Made by a program: the position numbers and the translations under genes. Positions 27-42,367 of a DNA stretch of 64,000 bases are shown piece by piece. The stretch is taken from the sequence record MF498773.1, one strand, 5' to 3'. Every line of letters begins with the position of its first letter. The stretch's first letter is position 1. The notes under the pieces are model-generated. The model was not told the origin of the DNA, ran no database searches, and was given only the letters and a program-made list of their open reading frames with translations.

Positions 27-131
27 TAGTATCACCTGAAATCAAAATATAAAATCTCTATAAGTATTTATATAGAAGATCTATAATTAGAGAGCGAAGC
101 GAACCGCCGAAGGCGTACTCACTACGTTCGT
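27..131. repeat. Non-coding hairpin element, copy 1 (AT-rich stem-loop plus GC mini-hairpin module)
   Basis: tagtatcacctgaaatcaaa...tataagtatttatatagaagatctataattaga is nearly identical to 42190-42254; it is followed by GCGAAGC and CCGAAGG mini-hairpins. Confidence 0.85.
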
Positions 132-147
132 ATTTTAAGGAGTAAAA

Positions 148-528
148 ATGTTAAATTGGTTAAAGAAAACTGATACACTAGATCTGGTTGTAGAGATCTC
201 TTATTACGATTCCATGAATTGTCTGGTGTTAATTGATACCCCAGAGATTCCTGTTACATTCACAAAAGGTTGTGACGTTAGGGAAACAATAAATTCCACA
301 ATCATCACGTTTGCAAAAAACGATAATAAGATCCAAAGTGCATTTAAAGATATTCGTGTTCCTTCATTTGTTCGTAGTGGTTGGTTGGACAATTATAGAC
401 AAATCCATGATGGAAATTTCGAAAAAGTAAAATCAAATCGTAAATTTTGGAATCATACCATTATCGATGTATCCGGTGCAAAAACACGGTGGGGTAAAGA
501 TATTCAAAGGTCTATTAAGGGGAAATGA
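148..528 (+). CDS. Hypothetical protein (126 aa)
   Basis: AAGGAG RBS before ATG; stop overlaps the next start. Confidence 0.8.
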   Translation: MLNWLKKTDTLDLVVEISYYDSMNCLVLIDTPEIPVTFTKGCDVRETINSTIITFAKNDNKIQSAFKDIRVPSFVRSGWLDNYRQIHDGNFEKVKSNRKFWNHTIIDVSGAKTRWGKDIQRSIKGK

Positions 529-1004
529 TGGCTCGTGAGATTGAAAGGAAATGGGTGGTTGATAGACCTATGATCCCATGGTATGCGATTGATATGTTCG
601 AGGAAGAACTTGAACATCAAGAGCAATGGTATATTGACGGTGTTCGTTATCGTCATTGTGAGGACTACTATGGTAGTCATTGGTATATAAAAACTATCAA
701 AACCGGTTTCGGGCTAGATCGCGAAGAAATAGAAACTGATATGGGACATGATGAGTTTTGGGAAATCATCAATGGTCAAAATAGTAAACCAGTTCGGAAG
801 ACCAGATATAAGATCCCATGTGAAGATGTAACGATTGAGGTTGATCTGATGGAAGATTTCTCATGTGTGTATGCGGAAATCGAGTTTAATAGTGTGGAAG
901 AAGCATTAGCTTTTGATAAAATTCCATACTGGTTTAAGGAAGAGGTTACTAATGATACTAACCATTCCATGTATGCATATTTTATGAGGTATAACGATGA
1001 GTAG
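525..1004 (+). CDS. CYTH-domain triphosphatase / adenylate cyclase-like protein
   Basis: N-terminal EIERK (ExExK), then KTG-REEIE, KTRYKI, EVD, AEIEF and PYWF-EEVTND motifs typical of CYTH enzymes. Confidence 0.85.
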   Translation: MMAREIERKWVVDRPMIPWYAIDMFEEELEHQEQWYIDGVRYRHCEDYYGSHWYIKTIKTGFGLDREEIETDMGHDEFWEIINGQNSKPVRKTRYKIPCEDVTIEVDLMEDFSCVYAEIEFNSVEEALAFDKIPYWFKEEVTNDTNHSMYAYFMRYNDE

Positions 1005-1847
1005 TATGGAATTTGTGAAGTGTAAGATAATCACAACTGGGTTGGGAGTGGAGTCGTTTCTTGAAGCAAACATTCCTAATTGGAGGGATGAAAGCGTTGA
1101 CCCACGGGATGCATTTTATGAGCTGGTAACAGAAAAAGAATTCATGATCTTAAACGATACAGTGTATCGCGTTATTTCTTATAAAGAACTAGACCCATGT
1201 GGTTATACTGACGTTGAGTGTAATGTAGATGGAACCATTGATTGTATTTCCTTGTGGTATAACGGTGGTGGATGTCTTTCCGAAACTATTGAAGGTGCTA
1301 TGAAATGAAAGTAGAAAAAAGTATTTTACGAGAGATGTGTTGGGATGATTGTCCGGAAGGGTGGGAAGTTCTGGATAATGAAGTGACTGGTTCCGGACGC
1401 TGGTCTGAGTACCATACAATGGTGTTTCGTATGCTTGGCGACGACCGTTATTGGGCTGTTAATTATAGTGTTGGTCTTACAGAAATGCAGGATGAACGTC
1501 CATTCGAAAGTGAACCTGATATGGTTGAAGTATTCGAAGTAAAACCAGTAGAAAAAGTCATCATTGAATATGTGCGGGTGTAAAATGAAACGTGTTTCTC
1601 TTAAGGACCCATTAGGTCATGATTTCATTATGTCCGCATACCCTTGCATTGAAACAATGAACATGAACATTAATATTGTTCGTTGGTTTTTCAATAATAA
1701 AAATTCTAAATTTGTTGATAAAGATCCACACCAAACAAACCCACAAGGGTATATCTTTTACGAAGGTAACGATCAAGGTCCATTCCTATATCCTTTCTCT
1801 CTGTGTGTATATGATTGGGAACTAGAAAAATTCTTTGACGTTTTTTG

Positions 1848-1882
1848 TTGACAACGGATTGGGGCTTATGAGACACTAGCCC
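1848..1882 (+). promoter_or_regulatory. Sigma70-type early promoter overlapped by a stem-loop
   Basis: TTGACA-18nt-GACACT with TG upstream of the -10; ggggct/agcccc inverted repeat spans the -10. Confidence 0.65.
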
Positions 1883-3267
1883 CGTCAAAACAAAGGAGAC
1901 AAATATGAAAGATATTCTTGATTATCCAGTTGGAACTCCCGGTAGTGAAGTTGAAAAGCATATGTTGGTTGCTCATGAACGTCGTTGTATGGAAACCATC
2001 GAAATTTCTTTTGGTGATGAGTCGTCATTTTACGACTATATCAGTGGTAAGAAGCCAGAAGATTGGGCCGAAGATTTCCGCAATCGTTACGAAGAAGTAA
2101 CCGGTTTTTCTTTCCCTCGTAATATTAGGTTTGGAGAATAAGAATGAAGAATTATCCGCATTTCCGTGGTTCTGTTTTTGATGTGTTCTGTAAGAAAACC
2201 GCTATGTATCCACCATCAGAAATTTTCGCGGGGTTAGTAAATCCAACAGGCCAACAGAAAAAGGCCGAAGTTCGTATCGCGACTATTTGTGAAGAATTAT
2301 ATGCACTGGAAGTTGGTGTGCTTCGGGATCTTCGTACGGTTATGAACGAAGTTCTTGTAATGGAACAGTTCCACAAAAATATTAAGTCAATCGTCTTCGT
2401 TGAAAAAACCGCAGAACTCCAAGCACATGTAAAGTATGCAATGGAACGTCTGAGTGGTATGATGAAGAAAGACCCTATTCTGAAAGACTACTTCGATTGG
2501 GGGTTGACCAAAGAAGAAATCAATAGTACAATCTTCAACATGGTAAACGAAATTGTTGATGATATTGAAGCCAAGGATATTGCCAAAGCACAAACTCCGG
2601 TAATCGTGGCAGAATATAACCGCATTAAAGGGGTAAAGAAATGAGCGATATCATTTTTGAAGATTATCAATCCGGTGGGTGTTCCGTAGAAGAGATAAAA
2701 GTGAAAAATCTCCAACGTATTGAGATTAGTTATGACGGAGGTCGTTTATCTGTTTACATCGATGGAGTCAAAGCGTATGGTAACATGTGTAGTGGCGATG
2801 ATTTCCATCTAACAATTAATCCGAGGTATTGATATGCGTTATGAAGATCTAAATGAAATGTGTGGTGGTGCAGTTGCTTGTGTGGAAACATACACATTTG
2901 GCAAAAACTATGTTATCTGGGATGTTTGTGGATATGACAATGTGTATCACAAAGTTAAAGTACCACTCCAAAAGGTTACACGCGAACAGGCACTAGAACT
3001 GTTGGATTACTACGATCCAGAACGGATTGCTAACTATGAATTGGAAATGGAACTCCACCGATACCACATAGGAATCTTTATCGACCACGACAAATATTCT
3101 GCTTGTAACTCTAAGTTTTCAGAACACACTGACGATGTAGAAGACTGGTCTACGCTACCATCACCCGTAACTCTGATGAAGCGCATTCAATGTGAAGAGT
3201 TGAGGTCTGAGATTATTGATCTTGAACTCAAGATCGAAAAAATTCAGGCAAGTATGTAATAAACAAG

Positions 3268-3296
3268 TTGACATCAAAATGATGGTATGAGATAGT
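3268..3296 (+). promoter_or_regulatory. Sigma70-type early promoter with extended -10
   Basis: TTGACA-17nt-GATAGT with TGa directly upstream (TATGAGATAGT), intergenic. Confidence 0.7.
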
Positions 3297-6200
3297 ATCC
3301 ATACAACGAAATCAATCCTAATGAGGAATTTATTATGAATATTAAAATCACTAATTCTGGATTCTCTACTGTTGGTATGTTCGGTCAAAACCATCGTTTG
3401 ATTGAGATTGATGGAACACCTTTGTTTTATACTTGCACCGCATTCTCCCCGAATGACCATCGGATTTTTGTCCTAAAGTCGGATCGTCAACTGTGTCATT
3501 TTGTTCCTCGTGGTGTAGTCGTTGATGAAGAGTTTGTTTTTAATAACATCGATAAGTTGATGGAAGAATCGGAGTCACACAATAATGTGTATATTTATTG
3601 TGTGACAACCACCGGAATGATTGTTCGTCCTGTTAAAGAGTCTTTTTCGTGGGGAGCACCCAGTTACAAAGGTGGTTATTCTTCTGATGTATTTGATATG
3701 GAATCTGATTTGTTTTCTAACATTATGAAACATGTCATTGAAGATGATAATATCAATCACTTCTATTTTGTTGATGCGGTTACTGGTCAGGAGATCAATT
3801 AATGTTCAAATCACTATTTTGTAAACATGATATGAAGGTTATCTTTGAATATACTTCTGAAAGTCCAGCAGAACAAATTTCTAGATTGACCGAACTCTTG
3901 GAACGACCAAAAAATGTAGAATCCCTTCTAAAAATGACACAAAAAGAACAAATTGTTATTGTGTGTTGTAAAGAATGTGGTAAAATGAAGACTGTTAAGA
4001 CAAAATTTAATCAAGGATAATCCCATGTTTAAGAAAACTACCAAAACCGATAAATCTGTTGCTATCTCCAAACGTATTAGCCTCATCAAAACCCACGTCA
4101 CCAACACAATGGAACTGTTTGACTTCCTGAGTGGTGTTATCAATAAAAATATTCTGGTTGGTGGTAAATCCGTCCAGTCTATTCTGGGGCCGTTGTACTA
4201 CCCGTGTGCAAACAAAGCAGAACGAAACCAATATGTGTTTTCTCGTTTTGCCAATTGTACTTTAATTCGAGAAAAATATGGTGTGCGGATCACAACCAAG
4301 AACAAATATATCGCCAAAGATGTTGCAGATCTTCTTGGTCAGGTATTTAAAGTATCAACCATCAACGTTGGTGATTTAATTACCTTTGTTGTGAAGGTTG
4401 GCAAACCGTCAGGTAATGCGTCGTTCACCAAAAATGAACCGGCAATTCAAGAAGCAAAAGATAAACTGTTTGAGATCAGTTGTAAGCTTCGTGAACTTGA
4501 CGAAGAACAAAAAAATCTAGATATCCGGTTGAGAGAAGTTAGTGATCTGTCTCGCCGTAATCGGACTACGTATCACAGTTTTCAACAAGAAGCATACAAG
4601 ATCCGAACCGAAGCAAAAAATAAATATGATGTAACCATCTAAGGGATATATCATGAGTCTAAAAACTATAAACCAATCCCAGTTAGAAAGGGCTATCGAA
4701 AACTATACCAAAATCATGTCTATGGTGAAAGATGCCGTTGATATCCGGGTCAATCTCAGAATGAATGAAACTATGGTGGTTGGGTGGATTTTCAAGCGTC
4801 GTGTCAATACATGCCAATATTTTCAAGATAACAGCTTTGCTGGTGGATTCTATACCGAGAAATATATCCGTGCCGAGGTAACAAAAAATCTATTACGAAA
4901 AATTGGTATTCTTCATATCGAGAAAGTATCTCTGTATCAGAGTATGGTAGTTATCGATGGCGCAGATCCTTTCATCCAAGCCGATGAAGAAATGTGCAAC
5001 TTCATCGATTTGATGATAGTGAAAACGCCATTGGTTGTTGAAAAGATTATTGCAAACTACCACGATTTGTATAGGACTAGACACGAATGAAAAAATTCAC
5101 CATCCTGTTCTGGATTTACACATTCTTAGTTTTCGGGTATATTGTTGAAGGTCCGGAAATAAAATATGTTGATATTCCAGCTACATTAGAAGAGTGTTAT
5201 TACGAACCAGAGCACACACAAAAGGGTATGCTTGTATGCGACTTTGATATCAGTGGATTCAGTAATTACGAGTCTGATAAGCTTATTGCTGAGTATGGTA
5301 AGTACATTACCAAGGAATATCCAAGACAAGAGGTTCGTAAAAAAGTTGATATGAAGGGTCATCAGTTCTTGATCAACGTAGAGACTTTGGAGACCAAAAA
5401 GTTTTTGGAAAATCTTGGGATAGCTGTAATCTTATGGTGTCTTGGTATTCTAATAGTCGTTGTTCGATTTATAGGTAATATGATTTATGGAGATTGTTAT
5501 TATGAAACTAGTTTCTCATAATAAAGTATGCCCTACTTTCGGGGTTGATTTCCATGGGGTTAAGTTGACTTTACCCATGAAATACCTTTATGGTTTTCTG
5601 GCTATGAATTATGATGGAACCGTTGTGGCTTACATACATCCCCCGTTATTCAATAACGGGTATTGGTCTGATACATATCCACACCGTGATGATATTTATG
5701 TTGCAAAAGTAGAGACGGATATCCATCCAAGTAAAACACTGGTATGTATTAGTGACAACCGTGTTAAAAAATATATGGAATAGGAAAATGAAACTGATTG
5801 TTAAAGAAGCCCATAAAGAAGATGGGATGACTGTAGGGCCTTACCAATGGATTGAGAAAACTGATGGTACTCTTTACGCTTGGCGCTTCCATCGAGTGAT
5901 GTCCATCGAGCTGTATGATCGTATGGTCAATGAATTGCTTGATGGCAAACCGCCGGTTGGTGATTCTAAAGATCTGGCAGCCCGTAAGTATCTCAAGTTC
6001 GGTATTATTACCGACCCGTCCACTTTACCAAGCGAAAACAAGGACACACAATGATGTCAAAAGATGAAGCTATGGAAAAGGCATTTTATGAGTTGTTGGA
6101 GATGGATGATGAGTATTTTGAACTACGTCTAAAAGAAACCATCGCACAGGGTGGAGTCTTTCAGAAAATGGCAGAAGATGGGTTTGTTCCATCCTTAGTT

Positions 6201-7488: not shown

Positions 7489-9051
7489 ATGTGTGGTCAG
7501 TACCCTGTAGATGATTTCATTGGACAAACTTTTCCTACTCCGAAAGGTGGGGTGTTGACTGTTGTTGGTGACAATGGGTTGAAGGGTAGTAAAAAGATGT
7601 ACAAACTATCATGCTCAATATGCTCCCGCGATTTAGAATTGTTCCCCCATCTGTTTGAAAGTAGAAAAGGAAACCTAAACAAGAAACAAATACCGTGTGG
7701 ATGTTCTTCTAGAAAAAGATACACAGAAAAACAAAATATTATTTTGATCAACAGAATATTACCGACTGTTGGTTTGTATGGTCATAAATGTGAAGGTTCG
7801 ACTGGTGTTATTGTCGGTGGTAACGAAATATTTTCAATATATTGTCCAATACATTCCCATGATAAAGAATTATACCCCAATCCTTTTACAACAACAAAAG
7901 GCCATTTAATGTCTGGACGGATTCCATGTGGGTGTTCCAATAGGGCAAAAACTAAGACAGAAGAACAGGATATAGTATTAATAAATCGGATTTTAAAAAA
8001 GAATACAGCATTAAAAACTCACAAATGTTTAGGTTATGCAGATAACAAACTACATTTTAAGATATACTGTTCGGTTTGTAATAGTGACGAAGATTTATAC
8101 CCAGAGCCGTTTACAACAACAAAGTATCAATTAGAAATGGGTTATATCCCTTGTGGATGTGCAAAAAATCATAAGTATGAAAAATTCCAAATTTGTATTC
8201 TTGTGGAACGTCACTTAACAGAAAACGAAAAATATAAAGGTCATAGATTTGGGGGTATTCTCGACGGATATAAAAACATACAATCTAAAGTAAAATTGTG
8301 GTGTCCTCATCACGGATACTATAATATTAGGTTTTCTGACTTAATTCATGGTGGTAAGGGGTGCTCTAGTTGTGGAGTGGAATCAACCAAAGATAAACTG
8401 AAAGAACAAGACCCAGTTGGCAAGATTCTATCTGTTTTAAAAACTGAAAAATTTGAAGGTCATGAATTTGAGGGTCTACCAAATGGATATAAAAACGCAC
8501 AATCTAAAGTAAAATTGTGGTGTCCTCATCACGGATATTATCAGATTTCTTATAATGACCTTGTTCATGGTGATCGTGGTTGTCCTTCTTGTGCGGAATA
8601 TGGATATAGACCAGTGAAACCCGGATACCTTTACGTAACCAACTGGACAAACTACGATAAAGATACAAACGAGTTTTTCAAAATAGGTATCACAAACTTC
8701 TTAGATCAACGTATCAAACAACAAGCTCGTAAAACGTCGTACAAGCCTCACCAGCTAATTGTATTCAAGTTCGAGGACGGTTCTATCCCACAAGAACTGG
8801 AACGTCTCACAAAGCCATACAGACAGGATATGGAGCATCCTATCATCACACCCGACGAGTTTGCTGATGGTACGACAGAAATCCTTCAAAACTGGATTGA
8901 TATTATTAAAATTCTCCCAGAACTGATTGACACGATCAGGGAGAAAGGATACACTCCTGAAATAGAAGTTGGTAAACGACTTTACAACAAGTTGATTAAG
9001 CTTGACAAAGACCAAATGGCTAAGGTAATCTTAGATCATCTTTATAAATGA
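7489..9051 (+). CDS. Free-standing homing endonuclease-like protein (Zn-binding repeats plus C-terminal GIY-YIG/T5orf172-like nuclease)
   Basis: Three CxxC...IPCGC repeats, two KVKLWCPHHGYY...GCxxC repeats, and C-terminal YLYVT...FFKIGIT...RIKQ. Confidence 0.75.
   Translation: MCGQYPVDDFIGQTFPTPKGGVLTVVGDNGLKGSKKMYKLSCSICSRDLELFPHLFESRKGNLNKKQIPCGCSSRKRYTEKQNIILINRILPTVGLYGHKCEGSTGVIVGGNEIFSIYCPIHSHDKELYPNPFTTTKGHLMSGRIPCGCSNRAKTKTEEQDIVLINRILKKNTALKTHKCLGYADNKLHFKIYCSVCNSDEDLYPEPFTTTKYQLEMGYIPCGCAKNHKYEKFQICILVERHLTENEKYKGHRFGGILDGYKNIQSKVKLWCPHHGYYNIRFSDLIHGGKGCSSCGVESTKDKLKEQDPVGKILSVLKTEKFEGHEFEGLPNGYKNAQSKVKLWCPHHGYYQISYNDLVHGDRGCPSCAEYGYRPVKPGYLYVTNWTNYDKDTNEFFKIGITNFLDQRIKQQARKTSYKPHQLIVFKFEDGSIPQELERLTKPYRQDMEHPIITPDEFADGTTEILQNWIDIIKILPELIDTIREKGYTPEIEVGKRLYNKLIKLDKDQMAKVILDHLYK
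8266..8541 (+). repeat. Internal duplication (~57 bp) in the endonuclease gene
   Basis: ggatataaaaac..acaatctaaagtaaaattgtggtgtcctcatcacggata at 8266-8322 and 8485-8541. Confidence 0.9.
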
Positions 9052-9620: not shown

Positions 9621-10644
9621 ATGGCAAAGAAAGAGATCGTTGAAACTCGTTGTGGTATTGACTTTTACCTGAGTAAGTTTAACGAAAAGTGTTCCACCAG
9701 AAAAGAAATTATGACATGTGAACGAGATTGGATAGGTTGTTACTTTCCAAAGAAATACAAATATGTTGTTATGGATTCCGATGGATTGTTCTACGCATAT
9801 TCCAAAAAGCCGGTTCTTAAACAATACTCGTGTGGTCTTGGGTGGGGAGTAGACTCAGTACAAGGCACAGGTCATGATAATGTTGAGGTATGGTTTAATG
9901 ATAGCGATTTCGGTTGGAAACCATGGTACAGTGGATATTGTAAAATCGAAGGTTAAAAATGACACCAGTCAAGTATTGCGAAGAACACCGAGCTAGGTAT
10001 TACGAATATGGGTGTCCTCAATGTAACATACGCAACGAAAGAGAAAACCGGGTCATAAGAGAGATGTCCATCAAGAAAACAAAGAATGGACTAACATGGC
10101 CGTTGAGTAAATCGGAAAAGAAGGTTTAAAATGAATCAATATTTTGAAGTGGTAAGTAATGACCCGCTGTTTGTTCTGTTGAAAGAGTCTGACGAAGCAA
10201 ATAAAGCTTTTAAAGATAAAAGCTCAAATGAAAATTGGGAATTGTTAAATTTGGCATATAATGCAGTGGAAGAAATTCTCTATAATCGTTATCCAGATTG
10301 TTTTGGTTGGCGGGCTGTTTTATCTCCTTTTGACGAAGACCGTTTCTTGGTAAAAATTAAAGGGTAATTTCTAAAAAGGGCTTGTAATCGTTCAAGCCCT
10401 TTGATAAAATTGTATCAAAGTGAAATAAGGAAAAATTATGTTTATTTCCTCTATTGATGAAAATGAAAAGCTAGTAGTTCAATCCAAGTATGATTCGGGT
10501 GTCCATCTAGGTTTCACCGCAGGCGTCCAGAAAGATGGTGAATATACTCTGACTACTCTAGACAAAGAGCTTACCGCCCAACAGATCTCGTATCTTGAGA
10601 TGATGTTGATGATGGAAATCAAAAAGATGCTAGACCCACGCTAA
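9621..10644 (+). other. Small hypothetical ORFs (9621-9956, 10131-10367, 10438-10644 and a short Cys-containing ORF near 9959)
   Basis: RBS-led + strand ORFs. Confidence 0.7.
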
Positions 10645-10918
10645 GGAAAAATTATGAAAGTCCAGTTTAAATCAGAAGAAGCTATGACTGAGTTTAAAAC
10701 GTTAGATCGCAACAACGAAGAACTAGCAAATGCATATGGTATGAGTCCCATCCCTATTGGATTTGTAGATGAAGAATGGTGGGATATCTTTAATGAGGAA
10801 GATCTGCATTTTTACACCATTAACATTTCCGACGAATCCCATTTTTTCGAAATTTTGGAAAAATAATTCAAAAACGCTTGCTCTCGGGTAAGCGTTTTGT
10901 TATTCTATTCTTGTTGAA
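10642..10918 (+). repeat. Direct repeat A: RBS + RF-family gene + terminator/promoter hairpin
   Basis: Homologous to 11482-11758 (offset 840 bp); 10828-10908 is identical to 11668-11748. Confidence 0.95.
10654..10866 (+). CDS. RF-family paralog (MKVQFKSE...)
   Basis: Shared family pattern MK(I/V)xFKSE...N..(A)..(Y/M)GMxP...E..(F/Y)FE. Confidence 0.85.
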   Translation: MKVQFKSEEAMTEFKTLDRNNEELANAYGMSPIPIGFVDEEWWDIFNEEDLHFYTINISDESHFFEILEK

Positions 10919-10941
10919 GCAAAACAGATGAGGAAAATAAC

Positions 10942-11265
10942 ATGGCAGAATTTATCACAGAAACATCTAACAAGACTCACCACAAAGTGGTTCAACTTCG
11001 CAAGGCCATTCGCAAGGTTGATACCGCAAAGATTGCTATCTTTCGGAAAACAGATTTGACTGATGCATATCGTGAGTACAACTACGCAATGTATCGTGCA
11101 GTTGAGGAAACCGGGGATCACAAAATTTATATCGACTTCAAATACAACCAACCAAAAGAGAAAATAATTGATCTGGTCGAAAAAATTTGTTCCATAGAAG
11201 ACACCAAGGTAGAATGGAATGGTTCTATGGGTAGTGCGATTGTTGTTACTTTCAAAGTAGAATAA
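10942..11265 (+). CDS. Hypothetical protein (107 aa)
   Basis: GAGG RBS; lies downstream of the cassette promoter. Confidence 0.8.
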   Translation: MAEFITETSNKTHHKVVQLRKAIRKVDTAKIAIFRKTDLTDAYREYNYAMYRAVEETGDHKIYIDFKYNQPKEKIIDLVEKICSIEDTKVEWNGSMGSAIVVTFKVE

Positions 11266-11274
11266 GGAAAAATT

Positions 11275-11484
11275 ATGAAAGTCCGTTTTGTGTCAGAAAA
11301 AGCCATGAACGAATATGGTGAAAAAGACCGTCATAACAAGCTTGTGGTAGAACGTTTTGGTATGAGCCCATTTGAGGTAGATACAGATCCAGATTGTGCT
11401 TGGTGGGACTATCTAGATGAGAATGGGGATATTGAATTCGTCTTCCCACAATTCGAACATCATTACTTTTTAACCAACATTTAA
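11275..11484 (+). CDS. RF-family paralog (MKVRFVSE...)
   Basis: Same TAAGGAAAAATTATGAAAGTCC start as its neighbours; family pattern present. Confidence 0.85.
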   Translation: MKVRFVSEKAMNEYGEKDRHNKLVVERFGMSPFEVDTDPDCAWWDYLDENGDIEFVFPQFEHHYFLTNI

Positions 11485-11758
11485 GGAAAAATTATGAAAG
11501 TCCGTTTTAAATCAGAAGAAGCTATGAATGTGTATGCGACGATAGATCGCAACAACAAAGAACTCGTGGATGCGTATGGAATGAACCCCATCCCTGTTGG
11601 ATTTGTAGATGAAGAATGGTGGGATATTTTTAATGGGAAAGGGGTACTTTGCTACACCATCAACATCTCCGACGAATCCCATTTTTTCGAAATTTTGGAA
11701 AAATAATTCAAAAACGCTTGCTCTCGGGTAAGCGTTTTGTTATTCTATCCTTGTTGAA
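11482..11758 (+). repeat. Direct repeat B
   Basis: See repeat A at 10642-10918. Confidence 0.95.
11494..11706 (+). CDS. RF-family paralog (MKVRFKSE...)
   Basis: Highly similar to 10654-10866 (GFVDEEWWDIFN, YTINISDESHFFEILEK). Confidence 0.9.
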   Translation: MKVRFKSEEAMNVYATIDRNNKELVDAYGMNPIPVGFVDEEWWDIFNGKGVLCYTINISDESHFFEILEK

Positions 11759-11823
11759 ACGAGAGATGAAAGAAGGACAAACTGGTACTTTCCTTCTTTC
11801 CAAAACAAACCGAGGATAAATTT

Positions 11824-12039
11824 ATGGATATCGAAACCACTTACTATGCTTTCGTTGACAAAGGTTATGCAAACCCACAGTCAAATCTGTTTGACCCAGT
11901 TAGTAAGATCCCGAACGTTGTGTACACACCACATACTAAACTTGACGGAACCTATTGCAAGTTTGAGGATGGTTCTGGTATACTCTATGTATACCGTGGT
12001 GGGGCGGATTACGATTTTATCCCCAAAGTATCTATCTAA
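11824..12039 (+). CDS. Hypothetical protein, paralog of 21042-21284
   Basis: MDIxTxYYAFVDKGYANP...EDxSGILxVY...DFIP is shared. Confidence 0.85.
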   Translation: MDIETTYYAFVDKGYANPQSNLFDPVSKIPNVVYTPHTKLDGTYCKFEDGSGILYVYRGGADYDFIPKVSI

Positions 12040-12182
12040 GGAATGACATGACCAACTTTGAATTTGCTATGAAACGCGCTAAGTTCCAAATCACCAAGCA
12101 CAAAGAGACTTTGATCTGTGCTGGTATTGTTGGTGTTGTTCTTTTCGTTATCATCCCGATGTTGAACGGTTAAGGAGATATT

Positions 12183-12569
12183 ATGCTGAACCAACGTTAT
12201 ACTGTAAAAAAAGATTTTGAAGATTTCCACAAAGAATTTCCCGAACTTGTGTTGGGTTCTTCTTTCACGGTAACAGGGACAGACGGAACCGGTATCATAT
12301 CTATCACCATGGATAGTGGAACCGAATATCATATCGAACAATATCCTTGGTGCTGGTGCTTCTACACAGAAGATATGACACAAGAATATCTGACCCCAGT
12401 TGAAAACCTCTCAGACGAAGAAAAGAATGAGCTGATGGTTGCCAATTTGAAGAAGAAAGAAAAGGAGATGGAAGAAAAGAAAGCTTTGTTGTTGGCAAAT
12501 TGGGAGAAGAAAGAGAAGGAGTTGATCGAAGCTCTGGAAAACCATCGCAAAAATAAGCCGGGGGTTTGA
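12183..12569 (+). CDS. Hypothetical protein, paralog of 20196-20435, with a charged coiled-coil tail
   Basis: MLN...EFP.L..G..FTV...GI..I.MD.GT.Y.I...WCFYT is shared. Confidence 0.8.
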   Translation: MLNQRYTVKKDFEDFHKEFPELVLGSSFTVTGTDGTGIISITMDSGTEYHIEQYPWCWCFYTEDMTQEYLTPVENLSDEEKNELMVANLKKKEKEMEEKKALLLANWEKKEKELIEALENHRKNKPGV

Positions 12570-13839
12570 TATGATTTCTTTGGTAGCATTATCTTGTTAT
12601 GCTCCGATATACTTCATTGTTCAGCTAGGGGAAAAGATAAATCGTGATGTGATTCTATCTTGTATTCTCATGATCTTTACTATCGTTCTGGTATTCTGTA
12701 CCACCACGATTACCCTAAAATATGGAACAAACCCTGTGGTATTGTTTTGGATTTGTCAAACGAACATTCTTACTTGTCTGATGGCTAAAATAATTTCAAA
12801 AAGTCTTTGACTCTATAGCTAGTTCTGGTAATATACCTATGTACCCACTGATGAGGAAATTGAAATGAAAATTCTTTTTACCGACCACCAAGCCGAACTA
12901 ATCAACCGCATCAAGGCTTATCACGACAGTCGTATCGCTCTGACAATTTCCCCTGAGTCTCGCGCATTTCGCGATATGATGGAAGGACAAGAGTTGTGCA
13001 ATTCTCAATGTATTGCGCTCCGCAACTTCTTCGGTCGGGTTATCGATTATGATGCTTGTGGTAATGATATCGCTGCTGATGAAATGACCAAATACATGCA
13101 TGGGGTTATGCGTGACCACGTTCGCAACTGGCTGTTTGAGGAATAAGATATGAAAAAGATTATGGAAGCTCTGGGATATGTTTGGTTCGAAACCCGTGGT
13201 GATTTCGTTGCTACTATCGGACAGTGGAAAGAGAGTTACACCTATTACGAAGAAACCGATTTCCCTTGTTGGTTGAAACTGGTGGATTCTATTGAGAGTC
13301 CATACAACGCAAAAACGATTATGATTTACGACAGGGTTTCTGAATCTCTGGTGGGGGAAATAAAGTTTGAAAAATTGTGATTTGATTAAGATTCTCCAAG
13401 AACGAGATCCCAATGCAAAAGTAGAATTCGTTTTCTTCGGTAACCATTTTGACGTAGACGGATTGGTGCATTTCGACCCAACTGGTTATAACGCTATCGA
13501 GTTGTATGGTCAGCCACTCCATGAGATGGAAATTGTTGTTACTTTCAACCAAGGATAAAATATGTTCTATGCACTGAAAAACAAATATACTGGTAAAGTT
13601 GCTATGGTAGAGGTGTGTGGTGAAGCTGTTTATTTGGTAGATGATGAAGCAATTGGAGATCATGCAGTTGCTTTTGTCTACACCGAAACCACCTCACAGA
13701 AAATTCAAGATACGTTGGATGGTGTCAACGACAATCTGTTTGTCCAAATCGATCCAGAACAATACGATATCGTGGAATTTATTTTGAAATAAATGATAAA
13801 AAGGGCTTGCTTCGGTAGGCCCTTTTCGACTATTATATT

Positions 13840-13878
13840 CATATCGAAACGAGAGACGGAAAGGAAGAAATCATGAAA
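13840..13878 (+). repeat. 39-bp leader/RBS cassette, copy 1
   Basis: catatcgaaacgagagacggaaaggaagaaatcatgaaa is identical to 14944-14982. Confidence 0.95.
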
Positions 13879-14704
13879 GCATTCACCAAAGGTCAGGTTG
13901 TAATTCAGGTTGCAAGCGTAGACGGTAAAGGCACCTTCTCTTGGTCCCGTGCTGTTGTGAAATCCTGTGGTAAGAAGCAAATGACCCTATGTCATCCAGA
14001 GACTGGTGCAATGCTCGGTAACCACTTCCGTCCTGAGCACGGTGTTGATATCGCCAATGGTCGGAACTATGGTGTTGTTGCTGATATGACTGACGAACAG
14101 GCCGACAAATACACCCTGACAATTGCTCAACTCTACGTCACTCGTGAGCTGTTTGATCTGGAAGACCAGCTTGATGCTGCTAAAGCTCGCAAGGCACCGG
14201 TTGCTTTTGTTGAGTTGATGGAAAAGAATGTTGAAGAGTTCAAGAAAAACGTTGCTAAAGTTCAAAGGGGTTAATCATGAAAATCAAAGACGGTAACGAC
14301 ATCATCACTTTCACTGGGGAATATGGGGTTTATGAATCTGGTGAACCCTGTATGTCAAGTTTGTCTGATATGATAGTTCGTGTTAATTGTGGTTCCGCTG
14401 AAATTATTGGTTGACTCAGTGATCTGTTCTGGTAAGATATCTATAGAAACTAACCGAGGTAATTAACATGAATTTCTTCAATTATATTGTTGTGATGAAA
14501 ACGGTTAACGGTATGGAAAGATTTTTGGTCTCTGCTATGGATCCTTCTAAGGCTAAGAAAAAGGTTATGGATTACTTGGTTGACGAATGCATTCCGTTTA
14601 GTTGTTCCTATCCGAGGAATGAAACTATACGAGTTGCAGATTCCCAAGTGGAAGAAATGAAAAATCGCTCTGATATCAAAACCCTTTATGTTTAAGGATC
14701 TATT

Positions 14705-14923
14705 ATGAAAATCAAATTCAAATCAGAAGCACACATGAACGAGTTCGCAAATATCAACCTTGGTTGGTCTTCCCACAATAAAGATCTGGTTCTTCGTTAT
14801 GGTATGAACCCTTTCGAGGTTGAGGTTGATATTACCGAATCTTGGTGGGATACAGTTGATGGTGATTTCGCTATTCATAAAGCCGGTGAAGGAAAATATT
14901 TTGAAATAGTTGTTGCATCGTAG
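14705..14923 (+). CDS. RF-family paralog (MKIKFKSE...)
   Basis: Family pattern: N...YGMNPFEVEVD...WWD...EGKYFEI. Confidence 0.85.
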   Translation: MKIKFKSEAHMNEFANINLGWSSHNKDLVLRYGMNPFEVEVDITESWWDTVDGDFAIHKAGEGKYFEIVVAS

Positions 14924-14943
14924 TCTAGTTCTGGTATTATATC

Positions 14944-14982
14944 CATATCGAAACGAGAGACGGAAAGGAAGAAATCATGAAA
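14944..14982 (+). repeat. 39-bp leader/RBS cassette, copy 2
   Basis: Identical to 13840-13878 but precedes an apparently unrelated ORF. Confidence 0.95.
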
Positions 14983-17775: not shown

Positions 17776-17784
17776 GGAATCAAT

Positions 17785-20684: not shown

Positions 20685-20687
20685 GAT

Positions 20688-22339: not shown

Positions 22340-22402
22340 CTGTTAATATTCTTTCACATTTTTTCATAACTTTTCATATCTGTTAACATTCTTTCATATT
22401 TG
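22340..22402. repeat. Two 23-bp direct repeats in an AT-rich intergenic region
   Basis: ctgttaatattctttcacatttt (22340) and ctgttaacattctttcatatttt (22380). Confidence 0.8.
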
Positions 22403-25021: not shown

Positions 25022-25421
25022 GGGGGTAATGATGAAACTAATTGAACTGATTGAGATTGTTAGTAGTGGACAGTCTGAGGTTTTGGTTGACCAATCTGGC
25101 TTTCATAATGTCTTAACCAAGCTTGGTATTAATGATTGTGTGTTTGAGGACTTCATCGAAGCAGAAATTTGGGTAGAGAAAAACATTGTTCTTCATAAGG
25201 TGGATGGAGTTATCTATCTGTTCTATAAGGATTTGTATCTCGCTAAATGGAATTCCTATTGCAATCAATCTGGTTGTAATCTGTGTAACCGCGCTACACT
25301 TGAAAGTAAACAAAACCGTAACATTTCTAAGTTCATGTATGACCTGATGGAACTGTATATGGACAAAGATGTTTATAAACAAAATCCATTCAAAAACTTG
25401 GAAATGAATGACGAAATTTAG

Positions 25422-25450
25422 TTGACGGGGTATCCCATTTATGGGATACT
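25422..25450 (+). promoter_or_regulatory. Promoter/stem-loop cassette
   Basis: TTGACG, gtatccca/tgggatac inverted repeat, GATACT -10. Confidence 0.6.
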
Positions 25451-25489
25451 CTTTTTGTCGATTGGGACATAACTATTGAGGAAGAAATC

Positions 25490-26344
25490 ATGACTATGAA
25501 CAAATGGGAATCTCAAGGTGTTGGTAAGGCTCCGTTCCGTTGTGTTGGTATGTTCAAGATGCCTAACAAGGATACTGCAACTATGCAGGATTATGCGGCA
25601 CTCCCTCAAGGTTATGGTGCTGGCTCCTGTCATGTGTGTGGTACTGGTATCATTTACAACTACATGATCCACGATGCAGACGGCCAGAAATTCGTGGTTG
25701 GTTGTGAGTGTGTGAACTACACCAACGACACAACTCTGATTGATGCAGTCAAGGCCGAGCGTAAAGCTTTCAACAACGCACAGAAGGCCGCAGAAACTCG
25801 CAAACGCAACGAAGAGGAACGAGCGCGTAATGGTGGTCTAACTGATAAAGAAATGGCTCAGAAGGCCGTACAGGACGAATGGGACGCAAAGCGTAAAGTT
25901 TATCGTGAGACCAACAAAGAACTGTTCGATGCTGGGTTGGCTACTGGTTACGAATGGATTGAAGAGATCATCGAATCCTGTATCCATTACTGCTCTATGT
26001 CTGATGCACAAAAAACTGCAATTGAAAACGGTATTGCTGATTTCGAGTTCAAGAAAAATCAGTTGAATGAATTCTTCGGTGCTGTTGGTGATCGGGTGAA
26101 GAAAGTAGAACTCACCACCACCTTTGAGATGTGTGTTAAACAAGCTCAATATTACGGCGATTATGATGTTTACCTCGCTGTGTTGATTGACTCAGAAGGT
26201 CGAACTTACAAATACATGGGTTCATCTTTGAAGTCCATCCCAACTAAGGGAAATACCGCCGTAATGTCATTCTCTATCAAGGCTCATGAAGAATATAAAG
26301 GGGTCAACCAGACCGTAATCCAGCGTCCTAAAATGCACGATTGA
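25490..26344 (+). CDS. Zn-ribbon, coiled-coil and OB-fold-like protein
   Basis: CHVCG...VGCEC at the N-terminus; C-terminal FFGAVGDRV...YYG...DSEGRTYKYMGS pattern. Confidence 0.55.
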   Translation: MTMNKWESQGVGKAPFRCVGMFKMPNKDTATMQDYAALPQGYGAGSCHVCGTGIIYNYMIHDADGQKFVVGCECVNYTNDTTLIDAVKAERKAFNNAQKAAETRKRNEEERARNGGLTDKEMAQKAVQDEWDAKRKVYRETNKELFDAGLATGYEWIEEIIESCIHYCSMSDAQKTAIENGIADFEFKKNQLNEFFGAVGDRVKKVELTTTFEMCVKQAQYYGDYDVYLAVLIDSEGRTYKYMGSSLKSIPTKGNTAVMSFSIKAHEEYKGVNQTVIQRPKMHD

Positions 26345-40034: not shown

Positions 40035-40352
40035 ATGACTCATATCACTATGCAAACCCTTCGTGAATCCATTATGGATATTCAGTCCGAACTGGTAATG
40101 GTAAATGCCAAGGTTGTTACTGGTATTAGCTCCAACTTCACTTTTTCCCAAACCGCCAACGACATGAAAGAATTGATGAACAACTTGGGGCCTTGTGAAT
40201 CACGCAACTACGTAGAGAAGGCCACAATCGAGTTCAAGAACTGCCACGATGTATGTGCGGCTCATGACGGAGAGATTACCGAAGATTTCAGTATCTATAT
40301 GGATCTGGTTGTTGCCAATCTTCGGGCTGCTTACATCAACCTTGGAAAATAA
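40035..40352 (+). CDS. Hypothetical protein, distant paralog of 17479-17775
   Basis: C-terminal DLVVANLRAA versus DMALVNLRAA. Confidence 0.7.
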   Translation: MTHITMQTLRESIMDIQSELVMVNAKVVTGISSNFTFSQTANDMKELMNNLGPCESRNYVEKATIEFKNCHDVCAAHDGEITEDFSIYMDLVVANLRAAYINLGK

Positions 40353-41712
40353 TTTAAAAAAGTTGTTGATCGGTATTCCGGCCTATGAGATACTAACTGT
40401 GTCGGGAAATGGTTCCCAAAGGAGATTAAGATGGATAACGTATTGGTTGCTCTGCATGGTGTTAAAGGTTTCAAGCATATCGATCTGACCCAATTCGAGG
40501 ACAAGATCGTTGTTGTTCTGAAATCTGGTGTCGAAATGGTATATGAAAGCTATTACGACGAAGATTTTGAAGGTGATGTTCATTGCTACTATGACAAATC
40601 GTCTGGTGGTGGCGTTGAATCCTTTGATTTCCAAGATGTTCTTGATTACGAGGTCTGATATGAAAAAGAAAATCATTAATGATATCAATAACGCAATCAG
40701 TATTTTCGAAAACGAATCTCTATTCAAAAGTACCAATGACTGTATTAGTGTGGCGATGTTCTCTCTGAATGGTGGTCCTTATTTCGAACACCACACATTC
40801 TCTTTTCAGGCTTTGGTGCGGGCAAGTGAAGTTTTCAATAAGTATCAGATCGCAACTGAAAACGAATTTTTTAATGTTAAAGATGTGGATGTGCGACAAG
40901 CATACTTTGATGTAATCGTTTCTGAACTAAAATTGGCTAAAACTTTTGTAGAAAAGTACTTGATCGAATAACACTGTTATGAGATACTATCCCTGTTGAG
41001 ACGAGACACCAATTAGGAGAATGACTATGTTGAACAAAATCGAAACTATGGTTGCTGAAATGAATGCCTTTTCAGAAGATAACTGGTTCAATCGCGTCCT
41101 TCCTGAAATGCGGGCTCGCTACAGCGAAGAACATGTAGAATCTTTTATCTCTGCAAATCTCAACCGCCGTTCTTACTCATATCAAACAGGCCGAAAATTC
41201 GCTCGTATCATGATGCACGATTACGGACGAGAGGAAACTACCGGTTCGATGGTTTGGTTTGTAAACATGGAAACCGGTGATATTCACAAAGGAAATGGAT
41301 GGAAAGGTGCTTCTAAGTATGTCCGTGGACACATCGACAACTGGAAGGCTGCAATGTCCTTTGGTTCTTCTTCTGGTGTATACGGTTTTATTTCTATCCG
41401 ATAAACCGTTGACATAAACAAAAGGCCAGTTTAAAATTCAACTATAAAACAAAGAGGGATTTACCATGATTATTCGTCTGAACATGCATGAGTTTTATGA
41501 ACTTTATCCGCGCTATCAAGAGTGGGTTTGTATCGAAGACCCTTCCCAATATGCGATTGAAGCTGTTTATAATCGTATGATGCATCAGAAATCTCTGAAC
41601 GTGATGGAAGCTCAAGAAGTTATGGCGTTTATTGCTTGGGTTGAAAACAACTCTTGCAAAGAAGATCTGGAAACCCTCAAATCAACTATCCAATATATGA
41701 AAGGTGTATTAA

Positions 41713-42192
41713 ATGCTGCTTGAAAAAATTAAGAAAGACCAAATCTCATTCCGTAAATCAGAAGATCGATCTACCCATTGCGGGAAAGTTCGTATCAACG
41801 CGCTAACAACCCTAATTGGTGAAGCAAGTCCTTCCGGTAATCAGGTAGTAACTGACGAACAAGTCCAATCGGTTATTCGTAAATTCGTTAAAAACATTGA
41901 CGAAGCAGTTACCGAGATCCGCAAACGGGTTGTATCCGTATCAAACGATATGACCAATCAAGAAGTGATGGATATTCTTAAAACTGATATCAAATTCACA
42001 GACTTAATGATCGAACGTGAATTGCTGAGTTCCTATCTTCCGAAGGTGTTTGACGAAGAACATATCAAAGAGGTACTTGGTCAGCTCGTCGGTGGTTCTA
42101 ACATCGGTCAAGTCATGGGAGCTTGTAAGAAGGCTGCTGCTGACAAAGGTCTTTTGTTTGATGGTGCCCTTGTCAAAAAGGTACTAGGTTAG
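41713..42192 (+). CDS. GatB/YqeY-domain protein
   Basis: LLEKIKKDQ...LTTLIGE...TDEQVQSVIRKFVK...E.ELLSSYLPK...IGQVMG...DGALV. Confidence 0.8.
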   Translation: MLLEKIKKDQISFRKSEDRSTHCGKVRINALTTLIGEASPSGNQVVTDEQVQSVIRKFVKNIDEAVTEIRKRVVSVSNDMTNQEVMDILKTDIKFTDLMIERELLSSYLPKVFDEEHIKEVLGQLVGGSNIGQVMGACKKAAADKGLLFDGALVKKVLG

Positions 42193-42295
42193 TATCATCT
42201 GAAATCAAATTATAGATCTCCTATAAGTATTTATATAGAAGATCTATAATTAGAACGAGTGAAACGAGTACGGCGTAGCCGGTTCGCTAAAGCTC
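42190..42295. repeat. Non-coding hairpin element, copy 2
   Basis: Perfect attatagatct/agatctataat arms; the GC module is the reverse complement of that in copy 1. Confidence 0.85.
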
Positions 42296-42305
42296 ACCAA
42301 TATTC

Positions 42306-42367
42306 CTAGAATCAATTCCTTGTTATCTCGTACAATGTTATGTATTCTTTGTAGGAATTGATTCTAG
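42306..42367. repeat. 15-bp perfect inverted repeat
   Basis: ctagaatcaattcct ... aggaattgattctag. Confidence 0.9.

What the first reader, a model, noticed from the sequence alone, without database searches (positions are those of the whole stretch)
27..42367. Repeated origin-like hairpin element whose GC module is inverted between copies
Seen: an AT-rich stem-loop (attatagatct-ctata-agtattta-tatag-agatctataat) occurs at about 27-90 and 42190-42254. In copy 1 it is followed by gagc-GAA-gcgaaccgcc-GAA-ggcgtactc. In copy 2 the same skeleton is reverse-complemented (gagtacggc-GTA-gccggttcgc-TAAA-gctc), with different loops and a compensatory cc/gg to gc/gc stem change. A 15-bp inverted repeat follows copy 2 (42306-42367), and an arm-like aattgatt(g)taga precedes copy 1 at bases 1-13, so the module order differs. 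Known: GCGAAGC-type GNA mini-hairpins are unusually stable in ssDNA. Inference: a modular, structure-selected cis element such as a replication origin, primase/helicase loading site or recombination hotspot.
Basis: partly seen in the sequence, partly recalled or inferred. Interest (0 to 1): 0.7.

Follow-up and report, generated by a model that had tools for sequence, protein, structure and literature searches.

The report
Six dispersed origin-like elements in phage
The two look-alike hairpin regions are two of six conserved, evenly spaced non-coding elements in a T4-like Aeromonas phage, each pairing the most easily melted DNA in the genome with a small GC hairpin unit that can sit in either orientation; they are most likely replication-start or special promoter sites, but no experiment yet shows which.

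Summary
The window is Aeromonas phage AS-szw (T4-like, Ceceduovirus), bases 1-64000. The 65-nt AT-rich core occurs six times in the 230-kb genome, two of them in the window. The same six gene neighbourhoods carry it in three lineages from two genera (phage 65, ZPAH1), and a prophage of Aeromonas rivipollensis has it too.

Each element has three parts:
- an imperfect palindromic box;
- an AT-rich quasi-palindrome ending in an invariant TAnnnT hexamer (usually TATAAT, no -35);
- a ~40-nt GC module.

The module has a "cap" hairpin (GTGA-GC-GNA-GC-GAAC, with invariant tandem G.A pairs and compensated flanking pairs) and a 3-6-bp GC hairpin with 11 different complementary stems. It is reverse-complemented at some loci, exactly so in ZPAH1.

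The six cores are among the eight least stable 50-bp duplexes of the genome and are more evenly spaced than chance (P about 0.001-0.006). The cap 15-mer also recurs, clustered and non-coding, in more than 100 unrelated viral contigs.

Best reading (about 0.4): promoter-primed replication initiation sites like T4 oriF/oriG. Main rival (about 0.3): a -35-less promoter plus leader cassette. No transcript or replication data were obtainable. I found no description of it in Rfam or the searchable literature.

The parts
1..21 (.). Right arm of a 20-nt inverted repeat upstream of copy 1. The left arm is the last 21 bases of the phage record, and the ~37-nt loop seen in relatives is missing from this record.
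   Evidence: The loop is present in CC2, AS-zj and ZPAH1. In phage 65 the inner loop CCTATAACTTTGTATAGG is conserved while the outer arms differ but remain complementary to each other.
27..91 (+). Core, copy 1 (c1): palindromic box 29-46 (GTATCAnnTGAAATCAAA), AT-rich quasi-palindrome 47-87 (inner arms 58-62 / 71-75), and the -10-like TATAAT at 82-87 followed by TAGA.
   Evidence: nhmmer E = 7e-16. Its least stable 50-bp window ranks 6th of 229,907.
90..130 (+). GC module, forward orientation: cap hairpin 90-104 (first pair weakened), central hairpin CGCC-GAA-GGCG 105-115, tail TACTCACTACGTTCG 116-130.
148..528 (+). First gene downstream of c1 (126 aa, no Pfam family). Its ribosome-binding site follows the module directly.
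41713..42192 (+). YqeY-like gene. Its stop codon TAG is the first three bases of core copy 2.
   Evidence: PF09424, E = 1.7e-5, below the curated cut-off.
42190..42254 (+). Core, copy 2 (c2): box 42192-42209, near-perfect AT palindrome 42208-42250, TATAAT 42245-42250.
   Evidence: E = 1.2e-15; z = -5.3. Its least stable window ranks 44th of 229,907.
42253..42297 (-). GC module in reverse-complement orientation. On the minus strand it reads GTGAGC-TTTA-GCGAAC, CGGC-TAC-GCCG, TACTCGTTTCACTCGTTC. The cap loop is a tetraloop here.
   Evidence: The same inversion occurs at this locus in CC2 and ZPAH1. Phage 65 has the forward orientation here.
42306..42367 (.). Inverted repeat (arms 42306-42320 and 42353-42367, CTAGAATCAATTCCT, 32-nt loop) between the module and the next gene. 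It is the same kind of AATCAATT-armed repeat as the one upstream of c1.
   Evidence: Counterparts exist in CC2, ZPAH1 and phage 65.
42390..42638 (+). First gene downstream of c2 (82 aa, no Pfam family).

Best explanation
The two copies belong to a family of six position-conserved cis elements of about 110 bp in Emmerichvirinae phages. I think they act mainly at the DNA level as replication-initiation sites of the promoter-primed kind known from T4 oriF/oriG.

Proposed mechanism:
1. The AT-rich quasi-palindrome is the local unwinding element. It carries a -35-less promoter (an invariant TAnnnT hexamer) that is helped by a factor bound to the upstream palindromic box.
2. Transcription enters the GC module.
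3. The GC-rich RNA-DNA hybrid, together with very stable hairpins on the displaced strand (the tandem-G.A/GNA-triloop cap and the GC hairpin), keeps the site open.
4. The phage helicase-primase can then load.

Shown: the anatomy, copy number, synteny, structural covariation, extreme duplex instability, even spacing and orientation freedom of the module.
Inferred: promoter activity, R-loop or hairpin formation, and any role in replication.
For: - Exactly six copies in AS-szw, and seven copies at the same six gene neighbourhoods in phage 65. ZPAH1 has the same six loci. Each copy keeps its orientation relative to its neighbours across genera.
- The cores are 6 of the 8 least stable 50-bp duplex windows of the 230-kb genome (z = 3.5-4.0). 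In phage 65 they are 6 of the top 10.
- Spacing is more even than random: gap CV 0.21, P = 0.0013; minimum gap 24.5 kb, P = 0.006.
- The hexamer is always TAnnnT in 30 copies (TATAAT 26, TACAGT 2, TATAGT 1, TATACT 1). It has no -35 partner. That matches the design of T4 origin promoters: a sigma-70-type -10 plus an activator site, within a ~100-bp minimal origin (PMC3016281).
- The module is orientation-free: an exact reverse complement at ZPAH1 c4, and inversions at c2 in two lineages. Two-ended or convergent or divergent arrangements occur (ZPAH1 c5, the phage 65 c3 pair, the prophage). This points to a strand-symmetric DNA role.
- Hairpins are kept by compensation: the tandem G.A pairs are invariant in 13 unique modules, three compensated changes occur in the cap, and the central hairpin has 11 different Watson-Crick stems.
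- c4 and c5 have their own canonical promoter between the element and the next gene, and c3 and c6 point away from the nearest genes. The element is therefore not simply those genes' promoter.
- c3, c4 and c5 lie near switches of transcription strand, in neighbourhoods like those of T4 oriE (baseplate hub), oriF (gp24-uvsY block) and oriG (genes 34-35).
Against: - There is no replication, R-loop, transcript-start or binding data of any kind. The RNA libraries examined were shallow, fragmentary and uninformative.
- T4 origins share no common sequence, whereas these six are homologous. There is no precedent for that in this group.
- The AT-rich part lies upstream of and over the hexamer, not downstream as the T4 unwinding element does. 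The downstream part is GC-rich.
- Nearest-neighbour folding does not rate the GC module above shuffles (z = -0.7 to -1.0). Its structure rests on covariation from only 3-4 lineages whose copies evolve in concert.
- Four of six copies are co-directional with a downstream gene, and three follow a terminator or hairpin. A plain promoter cassette explains that equally well.
- Even spacing and position near T4-like origin neighbourhoods are weak statistics. The six loci are one evolutionary sample, and being within 8 kb of an element has about 40% chance per locus.
Confidence: 0.4

Rival explanations
1. A transcription cassette only. The core is a strong promoter without a -35 element, dependent on an activator or on supercoiling. 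The phages encode AsiA, which blocks -35 recognition. The GC module is the 5' leader of the transcript, whose terminal hairpins stabilise or mark the RNA. This would be a relative of the PeSL/PmSL cassettes of T4-type phages.
For: - The TAnnnT hexamer is invariant, with substitutions only at positions 3-5, followed by a conserved TTAGA(A).
- The module starts 0-13 nt after that, so it would sit at the 5' end of the RNA.
- Intrinsic terminators or hairpins lie just upstream of c1, c4 and c5.
- The ribosome-binding site and start codon follow the module directly at c1.
- asiA is annotated in phage 65 and ZPAH1, and there are no MotA-box promoters.
- In the prophage, three further TATTAGAAT-plus-cap units point the other way, toward the late operon.
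Against: - No -35 element; the core is not called by the sigma-70 scan.
- c3 and c6 point antisense into the ends of neighbouring genes in all three lineages.
- c4 and c5 have a separate canonical promoter for the downstream gene.
- Inverting the module changes the RNA to its complement, and the G.A cap would be lost.
- Only six copies, against dozens for known promoter classes.
- This reading does not explain the even spacing.
Confidence: 0.3
2. Recombination or break sites. The AT palindrome or the small hairpins extrude and are cut or nicked by a structure- or site-specific nuclease. One candidate is the conserved SegE-like GIY-YIG enzyme encoded next to c5. The breaks would seed recombination-dependent replication and gene conversion, and the homologous copies would act as shuffling points.
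For: - Copies within one genome evolve in concert. All phage 65 copies share one palindrome type. Four ZPAH1 copies share one module, one of them as an exact reverse complement.
- The AP1 record has junctions inside elements: a hybrid with the c3 left flank and the c5 right flank, and a c4 copy with a new left flank starting inside the box.
- A SegE-like GIY-YIG gene sits next to c5 in AS-szw, phage 65, ZPAH1, avDM6 and AP1. The element-bearing prophage also has one.
Against: - AP1 may simply be misassembled at the repeats.
- Seg-type genes are common in such phages, so co-occurrence may be chance.
- The six loci are stable across genera, which argues against frequent rearrangement.
- No cleavage data exist.
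Confidence: 0.12
3. Six copies of a small RNA gene. The core is the promoter and the ~45-nt GC module is the functional RNA.
For: - At c3 the module is followed within ~30 nt by a bidirectional terminator hairpin, which would give an RNA of about 80 nt.
- The module sequence is more conserved than its flanks.
Against: - No Rfam family matches.
- There is no consistent terminator at the other copies.
- The module is inverted at several loci, is replaced by unrelated hairpins at phage 65 c3, and lacks the cap at phage 65 c1.
- No RNA evidence.
Confidence: 0.07
4. Chance similarity or an assembly artefact.
For: The AS-szw record ends inside the inverted repeat next to c1. AP1 looks scrambled at the elements.
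Against: The 30-mer is expected 0 times. The element is found in 21 independent phage records, in IMG/VR contigs, in metagenomes and in a bacterial chromosome.
Confidence: 0.01

Closest known systems
T4 replication origins oriF (uvsY) and oriG (gene 34): promoter plus unwinding element, primed by an R-loop (PMC3016281)
   Same: - A unit of about 100 bp.
- A sigma-70-type -10 without a usable -35, relying on another factor.
- An A+T-rich, easily unwound stretch.
- Several sites spread over the genome, some near switches of transcription strand and in comparable gene neighbourhoods.
   Different: - T4 origins share no sequence motif; these six are homologous.
- No MotA box here.
- The AT-rich part lies upstream of and over the hexamer rather than downstream.
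- A GC hairpin module is not part of T4 origins.
- Function is untested here.
PeSL / PmSL cassettes of T4-type phages (PMC2839356, PMC4122927)
   Same: Dispersed, conserved intergenic cassettes of T4-type phages that combine a stem-loop with a promoter and can mediate exchange between copies. Three copies follow a terminator or hairpin.
   Different: PeSLs have a stem-loop upstream of a full -35/N17/-10 promoter, then a ribosome-binding site and start codon, in tens of copies concentrated in variable regions. Here there is no -35, the hairpin module lies downstream and can be inverted, there are only six copies at fixed loci, and two point away from the nearest genes. The window has separate PeSL-like families (D4/D5/D8).
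d(GCGAAGC)-type GNA mini-hairpins and hairpin signals on single-stranded DNA: G4/phiX174-type priming signals, RSF1010 ssiA/ssiB, N4 virion-polymerase hairpin promoters (from my own knowledge, not tested here)
   Same: - A two-pair GC stem closed by a GNA triloop.
- Tandem sheared G.A pairs in a Py-GA-Pu context.
- Occurrence on either strand beside an AT-rich region.
   Different: No single-stranded replication stage, no N4-type polymerase and no RepB'-type primase are known in these phages. Recognition by any primase or helicase is untested.
REP/BIME elements of bacterial chromosomes, including the IHF-containing RIP type (PMC2817692)
   Same: GC-rich imperfect palindromes with GNA-like loops, found in alternating orientations around an AT-rich segment that carries a WATCAA-like motif (prophage arrangement).
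   Different: REPs occur in more than 100 copies per bacterial genome, have a conserved GTAG foot and go with RAYT transposases. None of that applies here.

Membership tests
T4 oriF/oriG-type origin | A ~100-bp fragment drives autonomous plasmid replication in infected cells | not testable with these tools
   Needs an infection experiment. The feature is as defined in PMC3016281.
T4 oriF/oriG-type origin | Middle-mode promoter: MotA box (TGCTT) near -30 plus a sigma-70-type -10 | tested here: not met
   The -10-like hexamer is present in all 30 copies. There is no TGCTT box in the element, and only 1-5 chance matches to the MotA-box-plus-(-10) pattern in the whole genome.
T4 oriF/oriG-type origin | A+T-rich unwinding element downstream of the promoter | tested here: not met
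   An extreme unwinding-prone stretch exists (ranks 4-61 of 229,907 windows). It lies upstream of and over the hexamer, and the downstream part is the GC module.
T4 oriF/oriG-type origin | Persistent R-loop formed by the origin transcript | not testable with these tools
   No suitable data. The RNA libraries were uninformative.
PeSL cassette | Stem-loop (terminator) immediately upstream of the promoter | tested here: inconclusive
   Present at c4 and c5 (intrinsic terminators) and at c1 (inverted repeat without a T-run). Absent at c2, c3 and c6.
PeSL cassette | Sigma-70-like promoter with -35, 17-nt spacer and -10 | tested here: not met
   The consensus scan does not call the core. The positions 17 nt upstream of the hexamer read CTATAA/TATAAG.
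PeSL cassette | Ribosome-binding site and start codon of a downstream gene at the 3' end; many copies in variable regions | tested here: not met
   True for c1, and for c2 after an extra repeat. c3 and c6 are antisense, and c4 and c5 have an intervening promoter. There are six copies at fixed loci in three lineages.
Known RNA family (Rfam 15) | Match to a curated covariance model | tested here: not met
   Only tRNAs reach the gathering score in the window. Nothing credible was found at E up to 5 on five element loci, and nothing at cap sites in 16 other contigs.
REP/BIME | High copy number in a bacterial chromosome, a GTAG foot, an associated RAYT gene | tested here: not met
   Six copies per phage genome and no GTAG foot. 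The only bacterial hit among 58 pattern matches is a prophage.
Single-strand hairpin signals (N4 promoter, G4/phiX-type priming site) | Recognition of the extruded or single-stranded hairpin by a dedicated polymerase, primase or PriA | not testable with these tools
   Only the hairpin geometry (GNA triloop, short GC stem) could be checked, and it is met.

The most novel reading that the evidence does not exclude
Emmerichvirinae phages use six homologous, evenly spaced replication origins. This would be unlike T4, whose origins share no motif. Each would be built from the genome's most meltable DNA plus an orientation-free hairpin module that works on single-stranded DNA. Its 15-nt cap (GTGA-GC-GNA-GC-GAAC, a G.A-zipped GNA mini-hairpin) would be a general structural signal that many unrelated viruses have adopted in their non-coding control regions.
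Probability: 0.25. Interest if true: 0.85.

Novelty: new variant of a known kind. Interest (0 to 1): 0.62.

Why it matters
Where and how T4-type phages other than T4 start replication is largely unknown, and even T4's origins share no recognisable signature. A family of six homologous, conserved ~110-bp elements would give origin mapping, plasmid replication assays and protein pull-downs a precise target in phages now being developed against fish-pathogenic Aeromonas.

The 15-nt cap is a separate lead. It recurs in non-coding DNA of more than 100 unrelated viral contigs and is missed by standard folding energies. That points to a small, physically special hairpin with a general role, in DNA or RNA, that can be tested by melting and footprinting experiments.

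If the elements turn out to be only promoters, they still define a new -35-less promoter class in AsiA-encoding phages that lack MotA-box promoters.

Tried and rejected
- **T4-type late promoter on the opposite strand (TATAAATA in the loop): rejected.** Late genes here use CCTAAATA, and phage 65 and c6 lack the motif.
- **MotA-type middle promoter: rejected**.
- **Canonical sigma-70 promoter:** not called by the scan.
- **Known RNA family:** none.
- **RNA evidence:** two run searches and one read-laying run gave only shallow, fragmentary contigs, with no starts or ends.
- **More divergent copies:** the metagenome scan gave 87 pattern hits, of which 2 were true and both phage-65-like. The genome scan gave 58 pattern hits, of which 1 was true, a prophage.
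- **Pairing of the cap arms with the CTCAC and GTTCG words of the tail (pseudoknot or long hairpin):** not supported. Changes there are uncompensated in phage 65.
- **Nearest-neighbour folding of the module and cap:** uninformative.
- **Gene families next to cap sites in other viruses:** none dominates.
- **Shared proteins between the prophage and the T4-like phages:** only a lysozyme and a SegE-like domain.
- **Literature:** no paper on these phages mentions the repeats. Sequence-word searches returned only primer noise and REP tables.
- **A mistake of mine:** I first thought phage G2's record also began at the c1 repeat. That was a misreading of a minus-strand match.


Full report
**Identity of the window.** Bases 1-6000 match Aeromonas phage AS-szw (MF498773.1) at 100% over record positions 1-6000. 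The window is therefore the first 64 kb of this 229,957-bp T4-like genome (Straboviridae, Emmerichvirinae, Ceceduovirus). I fetched the rest of the record. I also fetched phage 65 in full and about 108 kb of ZPAH1.

**Check of the observation.**
- The 65-nt repeat (27-91 and 42190-42254) is 58/65 identical. A 30-nt part is identical in both copies, against 0 matches expected by chance.
- Copy 1 is followed by a GC-rich module at 90-130. Copy 2 is followed at 42253-42297 by the reverse complement of that whole module, with a compensated stem.
- The 15-nt inverted repeat after copy 2 is exact.
- Bases 1-21 are half of an inverted repeat whose other half ends the GenBank record. Relatives have a ~37-40-nt loop between the arms, so the record ends sit inside this repeat and the loop is missing from it.

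**Extent of the family.**
- BLAST and a profile search find exactly six copies in AS-szw. In genome coordinates: c1 27-91 (+), c2 42190-42254 (+), c3 72552-72616 (+), c4 115727-115791 (-), c5 140262-140326 (+), c6 181672-181736 (-).
- The element is found in 21 phage records, all from Aeromonas, with 3-10 places each.
- Phage 65 (another genus) has seven copies at the same six neighbourhoods:
  - after gene 35;
  - between inh and gene 24;
  - between genes 54 and 26, where it is a convergent pair;
  - after a YqeY-like gene near ndd and gene 52;
  - in a variable early region;
  - near alc and vs.1.
- ZPAH1 has the same six loci.
- Orientation relative to neighbours is conserved. c3 and c6 are antisense to the flanking genes in all three lineages.
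- Outside these phages, true copies were found only in two phage-65-like metagenome contigs and in one unrelated phage contig. That contig is identical to a prophage region of Aeromonas rivipollensis DSM 24593. It encodes a different terminase type, an HNH protein, a lysozyme and a Rha/antirepressor protein.

**Anatomy.** An element consists of:
- (i) a box, GT(T/A)TCAnnTGnAATCAAA, an imperfect palindrome;
- (ii) an AT-rich quasi-palindrome;
- (iii) a hexamer that is TATAAT in 26 of 30 copies and otherwise TACAGT, TATAGT or TATACT, so always TAnnnT, followed by TTAGA(A);
- (iv) the ~40-nt GC module, 0-13 nt further on.

The palindrome arms differ between Ceceduovirus and phage 65 (GATCT/AGATC against AAGTT/AACTT). 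Both versions are self-complementary. ZPAH1 and most AS-szw copies are imperfect, so selection on the long stem is only partly supported.

The module has three parts.
- Its first 15 nt fold as a cap: G-C, T-A, tandem G.A/A.G, G-C, C-G, then a GNA triloop. In 13 unique modules the tandem G.A pairs never vary. The first pair changes G-C to A-T once. The inner pair changes C-G to T-A in the phage 65 lineage. Phage 65 c2 adds a pair.
- The next hairpin has 11 different fully Watson-Crick stems of 3-6 bp.
- The tail, (A)CTCAC(TA)CGTTCG, is conserved in sequence. Its variants are not compensated, so I found no support for pairing it with the cap arms.

Standard folding energies do not single out the module (z about -1). 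They do single out the c2 palindrome (z = -5.3).

**Modularity.**
- The module is inverted at c2 in AS-szw, CC2 and ZPAH1 but is forward in phage 65.
- At ZPAH1 c4 it is the exact 40-nt reverse complement of the module found forward at c1, c3 and c5.
- ZPAH1 c5 has a core with a box at both ends.
- The phage 65 c3 pair shares two unrelated GC hairpins.
- The prophage has the core flanked by inverted modules, plus two more cap units, inside a 1.4-kb non-coding region with other repeats.
- Copies within a genome resemble each other more than they resemble their positional counterparts in other genomes. That is concerted evolution.

**Physical and positional properties.**
- By nearest-neighbour duplex energies, the six cores are 6 of the 8 least stable 50-bp windows of the AS-szw genome (ranks 4-61 of 229,907). 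In phage 65 they are 6 of the top 10.
- The gaps between copies (24.5-48.3 kb) are more even than for random points (CV 0.21, P = 0.0013; minimum gap, P = 0.006). The three lineages share the loci, so this is one sample.
- c3, c4 and c5 lie within about 0-3.5 kb of switches of coding strand.

**What the element is not.**
- It is not a late promoter; late genes use CCTAAATA.
- It is not a MotA-type promoter.
- It is not a canonical sigma-70 promoter.
- It is not a known RNA family.
- It is not a PeSL as defined in PMC4122927. The window has separate families of canonical early promoter and leader cassettes (D4, D5, D8).
- c4 and c5 carry an ordinary GTTTACA-N17-TAnnAT promoter between the element and the next gene.
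- c5 is followed by an unannotated, conserved 39-codon ORF.

**An unexpected wider motif.** A composition-matched control, the reversed sequence, gave 114 contigs, so the raw count is near chance. The placement is not.

| | Cap 15-mer | Reversed control |
|---|---|---|
| Hits inside long open frames | 38% | 77% |
| Hits with a second GAGCGNAGCG within 200 nt | 20% | 2.6% |
| Loci with several hits | 8 | 0 |

- In about 15% of non-coding hits the flanks extend the cap into a longer stem of variable sequence.
- Orientation shows no bias relative to flanking genes: 14 hits have both flanking genes on the same strand as the cap and 13 have both on the opposite strand.
- The neighbouring genes belong to many virus types with no dominant family.
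- No Rfam family covers these sites.
- I read this as a small hairpin with special physical properties that has been recruited repeatedly. From my own knowledge, d(GCGAAGC) and Py-GA-Pu tandem G.A motifs are unusually stable in DNA. I did not test this.

**Interpretation.** Several results speak for a DNA-level cis element rather than a gene-specific regulator: extreme meltability, even spacing, six syntenic loci, a -10-type hexamer without a -35, the orientation-free hairpin module, and the two-ended variants. The best-documented analogue is the T4 oriF/oriG design, a ~100-bp unit of an activator-dependent promoter plus an unwinding element that forms a priming R-loop (PMC3016281). I rank a promoter-primed initiation site first, at about 0.4.

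The element fails two defining details of that family (MotA box, downstream AT-rich element). I therefore claim only that it may work like such an origin, not that it is a member.

A pure promoter-plus-leader cassette (about 0.3) explains the hexamer, the upstream terminators and the c1/c2 layouts. It does not explain the antisense copies, the module inversions or the spacing.

A recombination or nuclease-target role (about 0.12) is suggested by concerted evolution, by junctions inside elements in the AP1 record, and by a conserved SegE-like GIY-YIG gene beside c5, which the prophage also has.

These readings are not exclusive. T4 origins are promoters, and homologous repeats recombine.

**Limits.**
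- No functional data could be obtained. The laid libraries are only guessed to be RNA, and they were shallow.
- Covariation comes from three or four lineages with concerted evolution.
- The ZPAH1 genome was only partly scanned.
- The AP1 rearrangements may be assembly errors.

Noticed in passing
window 1-21 with MF498773.1 229937-229957 (L001:39937-39957): The AS-szw GenBank record starts and ends inside a 20-nt-armed inverted repeat. The ~37-nt loop present in CC2, AS-zj and ZPAH1 is absent from the record, probably an assembly break at a hairpin. The inner loop CCTATAACTTTGTATAGG is conserved in phage 65, while the outer arms differ but remain complementary to each other.
   Followed up: partly
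MF498773.1 140562-141464 (L003:30562-31464, minus strand): The 'hypothetical protein' next to c5 has a SegE-type GIY-YIG endonuclease domain (PF19835, E = 3e-30). It is kept at the same place in phage 65 (65p046), ZPAH1, avDM6 and AP1, which is unusual for a homing endonuclease. The element-bearing prophage also encodes a SegE-like ORF (L018:4564-5025).
   Followed up: partly
MF498773.1 140446-140565 (outside the window): An unannotated 39-codon ORF (MNSKTFSVTIPLIPFPF...) with its own GTTTACA-N17-TACTAT promoter lies downstream of c5. It is conserved in avDM6, and a short ORF is annotated in the corresponding position in phage 65 (65p047).
   Followed up: partly
L120 (Aeromonas phage AP1, MT713136.1 114107-154225): Gene order in this record is scrambled relative to its relatives (nrdA next to a baseplate hub gene, the capsid gene next to rIIB). 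At least two junctions lie inside copies of the element. This is either real recombination between copies or misassembly at the repeats.
   Followed up: partly
IMG/VR loci L184-L299: The 15-mer GTGAGCG(A/T)AGCGAAC recurs in non-coding, often repeat-rich regions of more than 100 unrelated viral contigs (GC 18-70%), sometimes as the tip of longer hairpins with variable stems. It is not in Rfam.
   Followed up: partly
L018:7083-8550 and L159 (Aeromonas rivipollensis DSM 24593 chromosome): This is a 1.4-kb non-coding region of a prophage between divergent operons. It contains the core, four cap modules in both orientations, three AATGACACTAT repeats and two 32-nt repeats with a CGAATATTATTCG-like palindrome. 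It looks like a control or origin region.
   Followed up: partly
window 10642-25504: There are families of canonical early promoter and leader cassettes, for example AAAATAATTTCAAAAAGTCTTTGACT...TAATAT, then ATATCGAAACGAGAGAC and AGGAAGAAATCATG (3-6 copies). There are also tandem paralogous small genes (10642-11758, 8222-8593, 7629-8132). These, not the finding, are the PeSL-like elements of this genome.
   Followed up: no
window 62303-63918, minus strand: A cluster of seven tRNA genes.
   Followed up: no
MF498773.1 upstream of late genes (e.g. 111564, 107592, 99581): The late promoter motif of this phage is (C)CTAAATA rather than T4's TATAAATA.
   Followed up: partly
MF498773.1 about 161303 and 222852: These are the only two other sites as easily melted as the six cores. 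They have no similarity to the element.
   Followed up: no
L273:5274-6207: An unrelated viral contig picked up by the cap scan carries a GOLLD RNA and a tmRNA-like gene.
   Followed up: no
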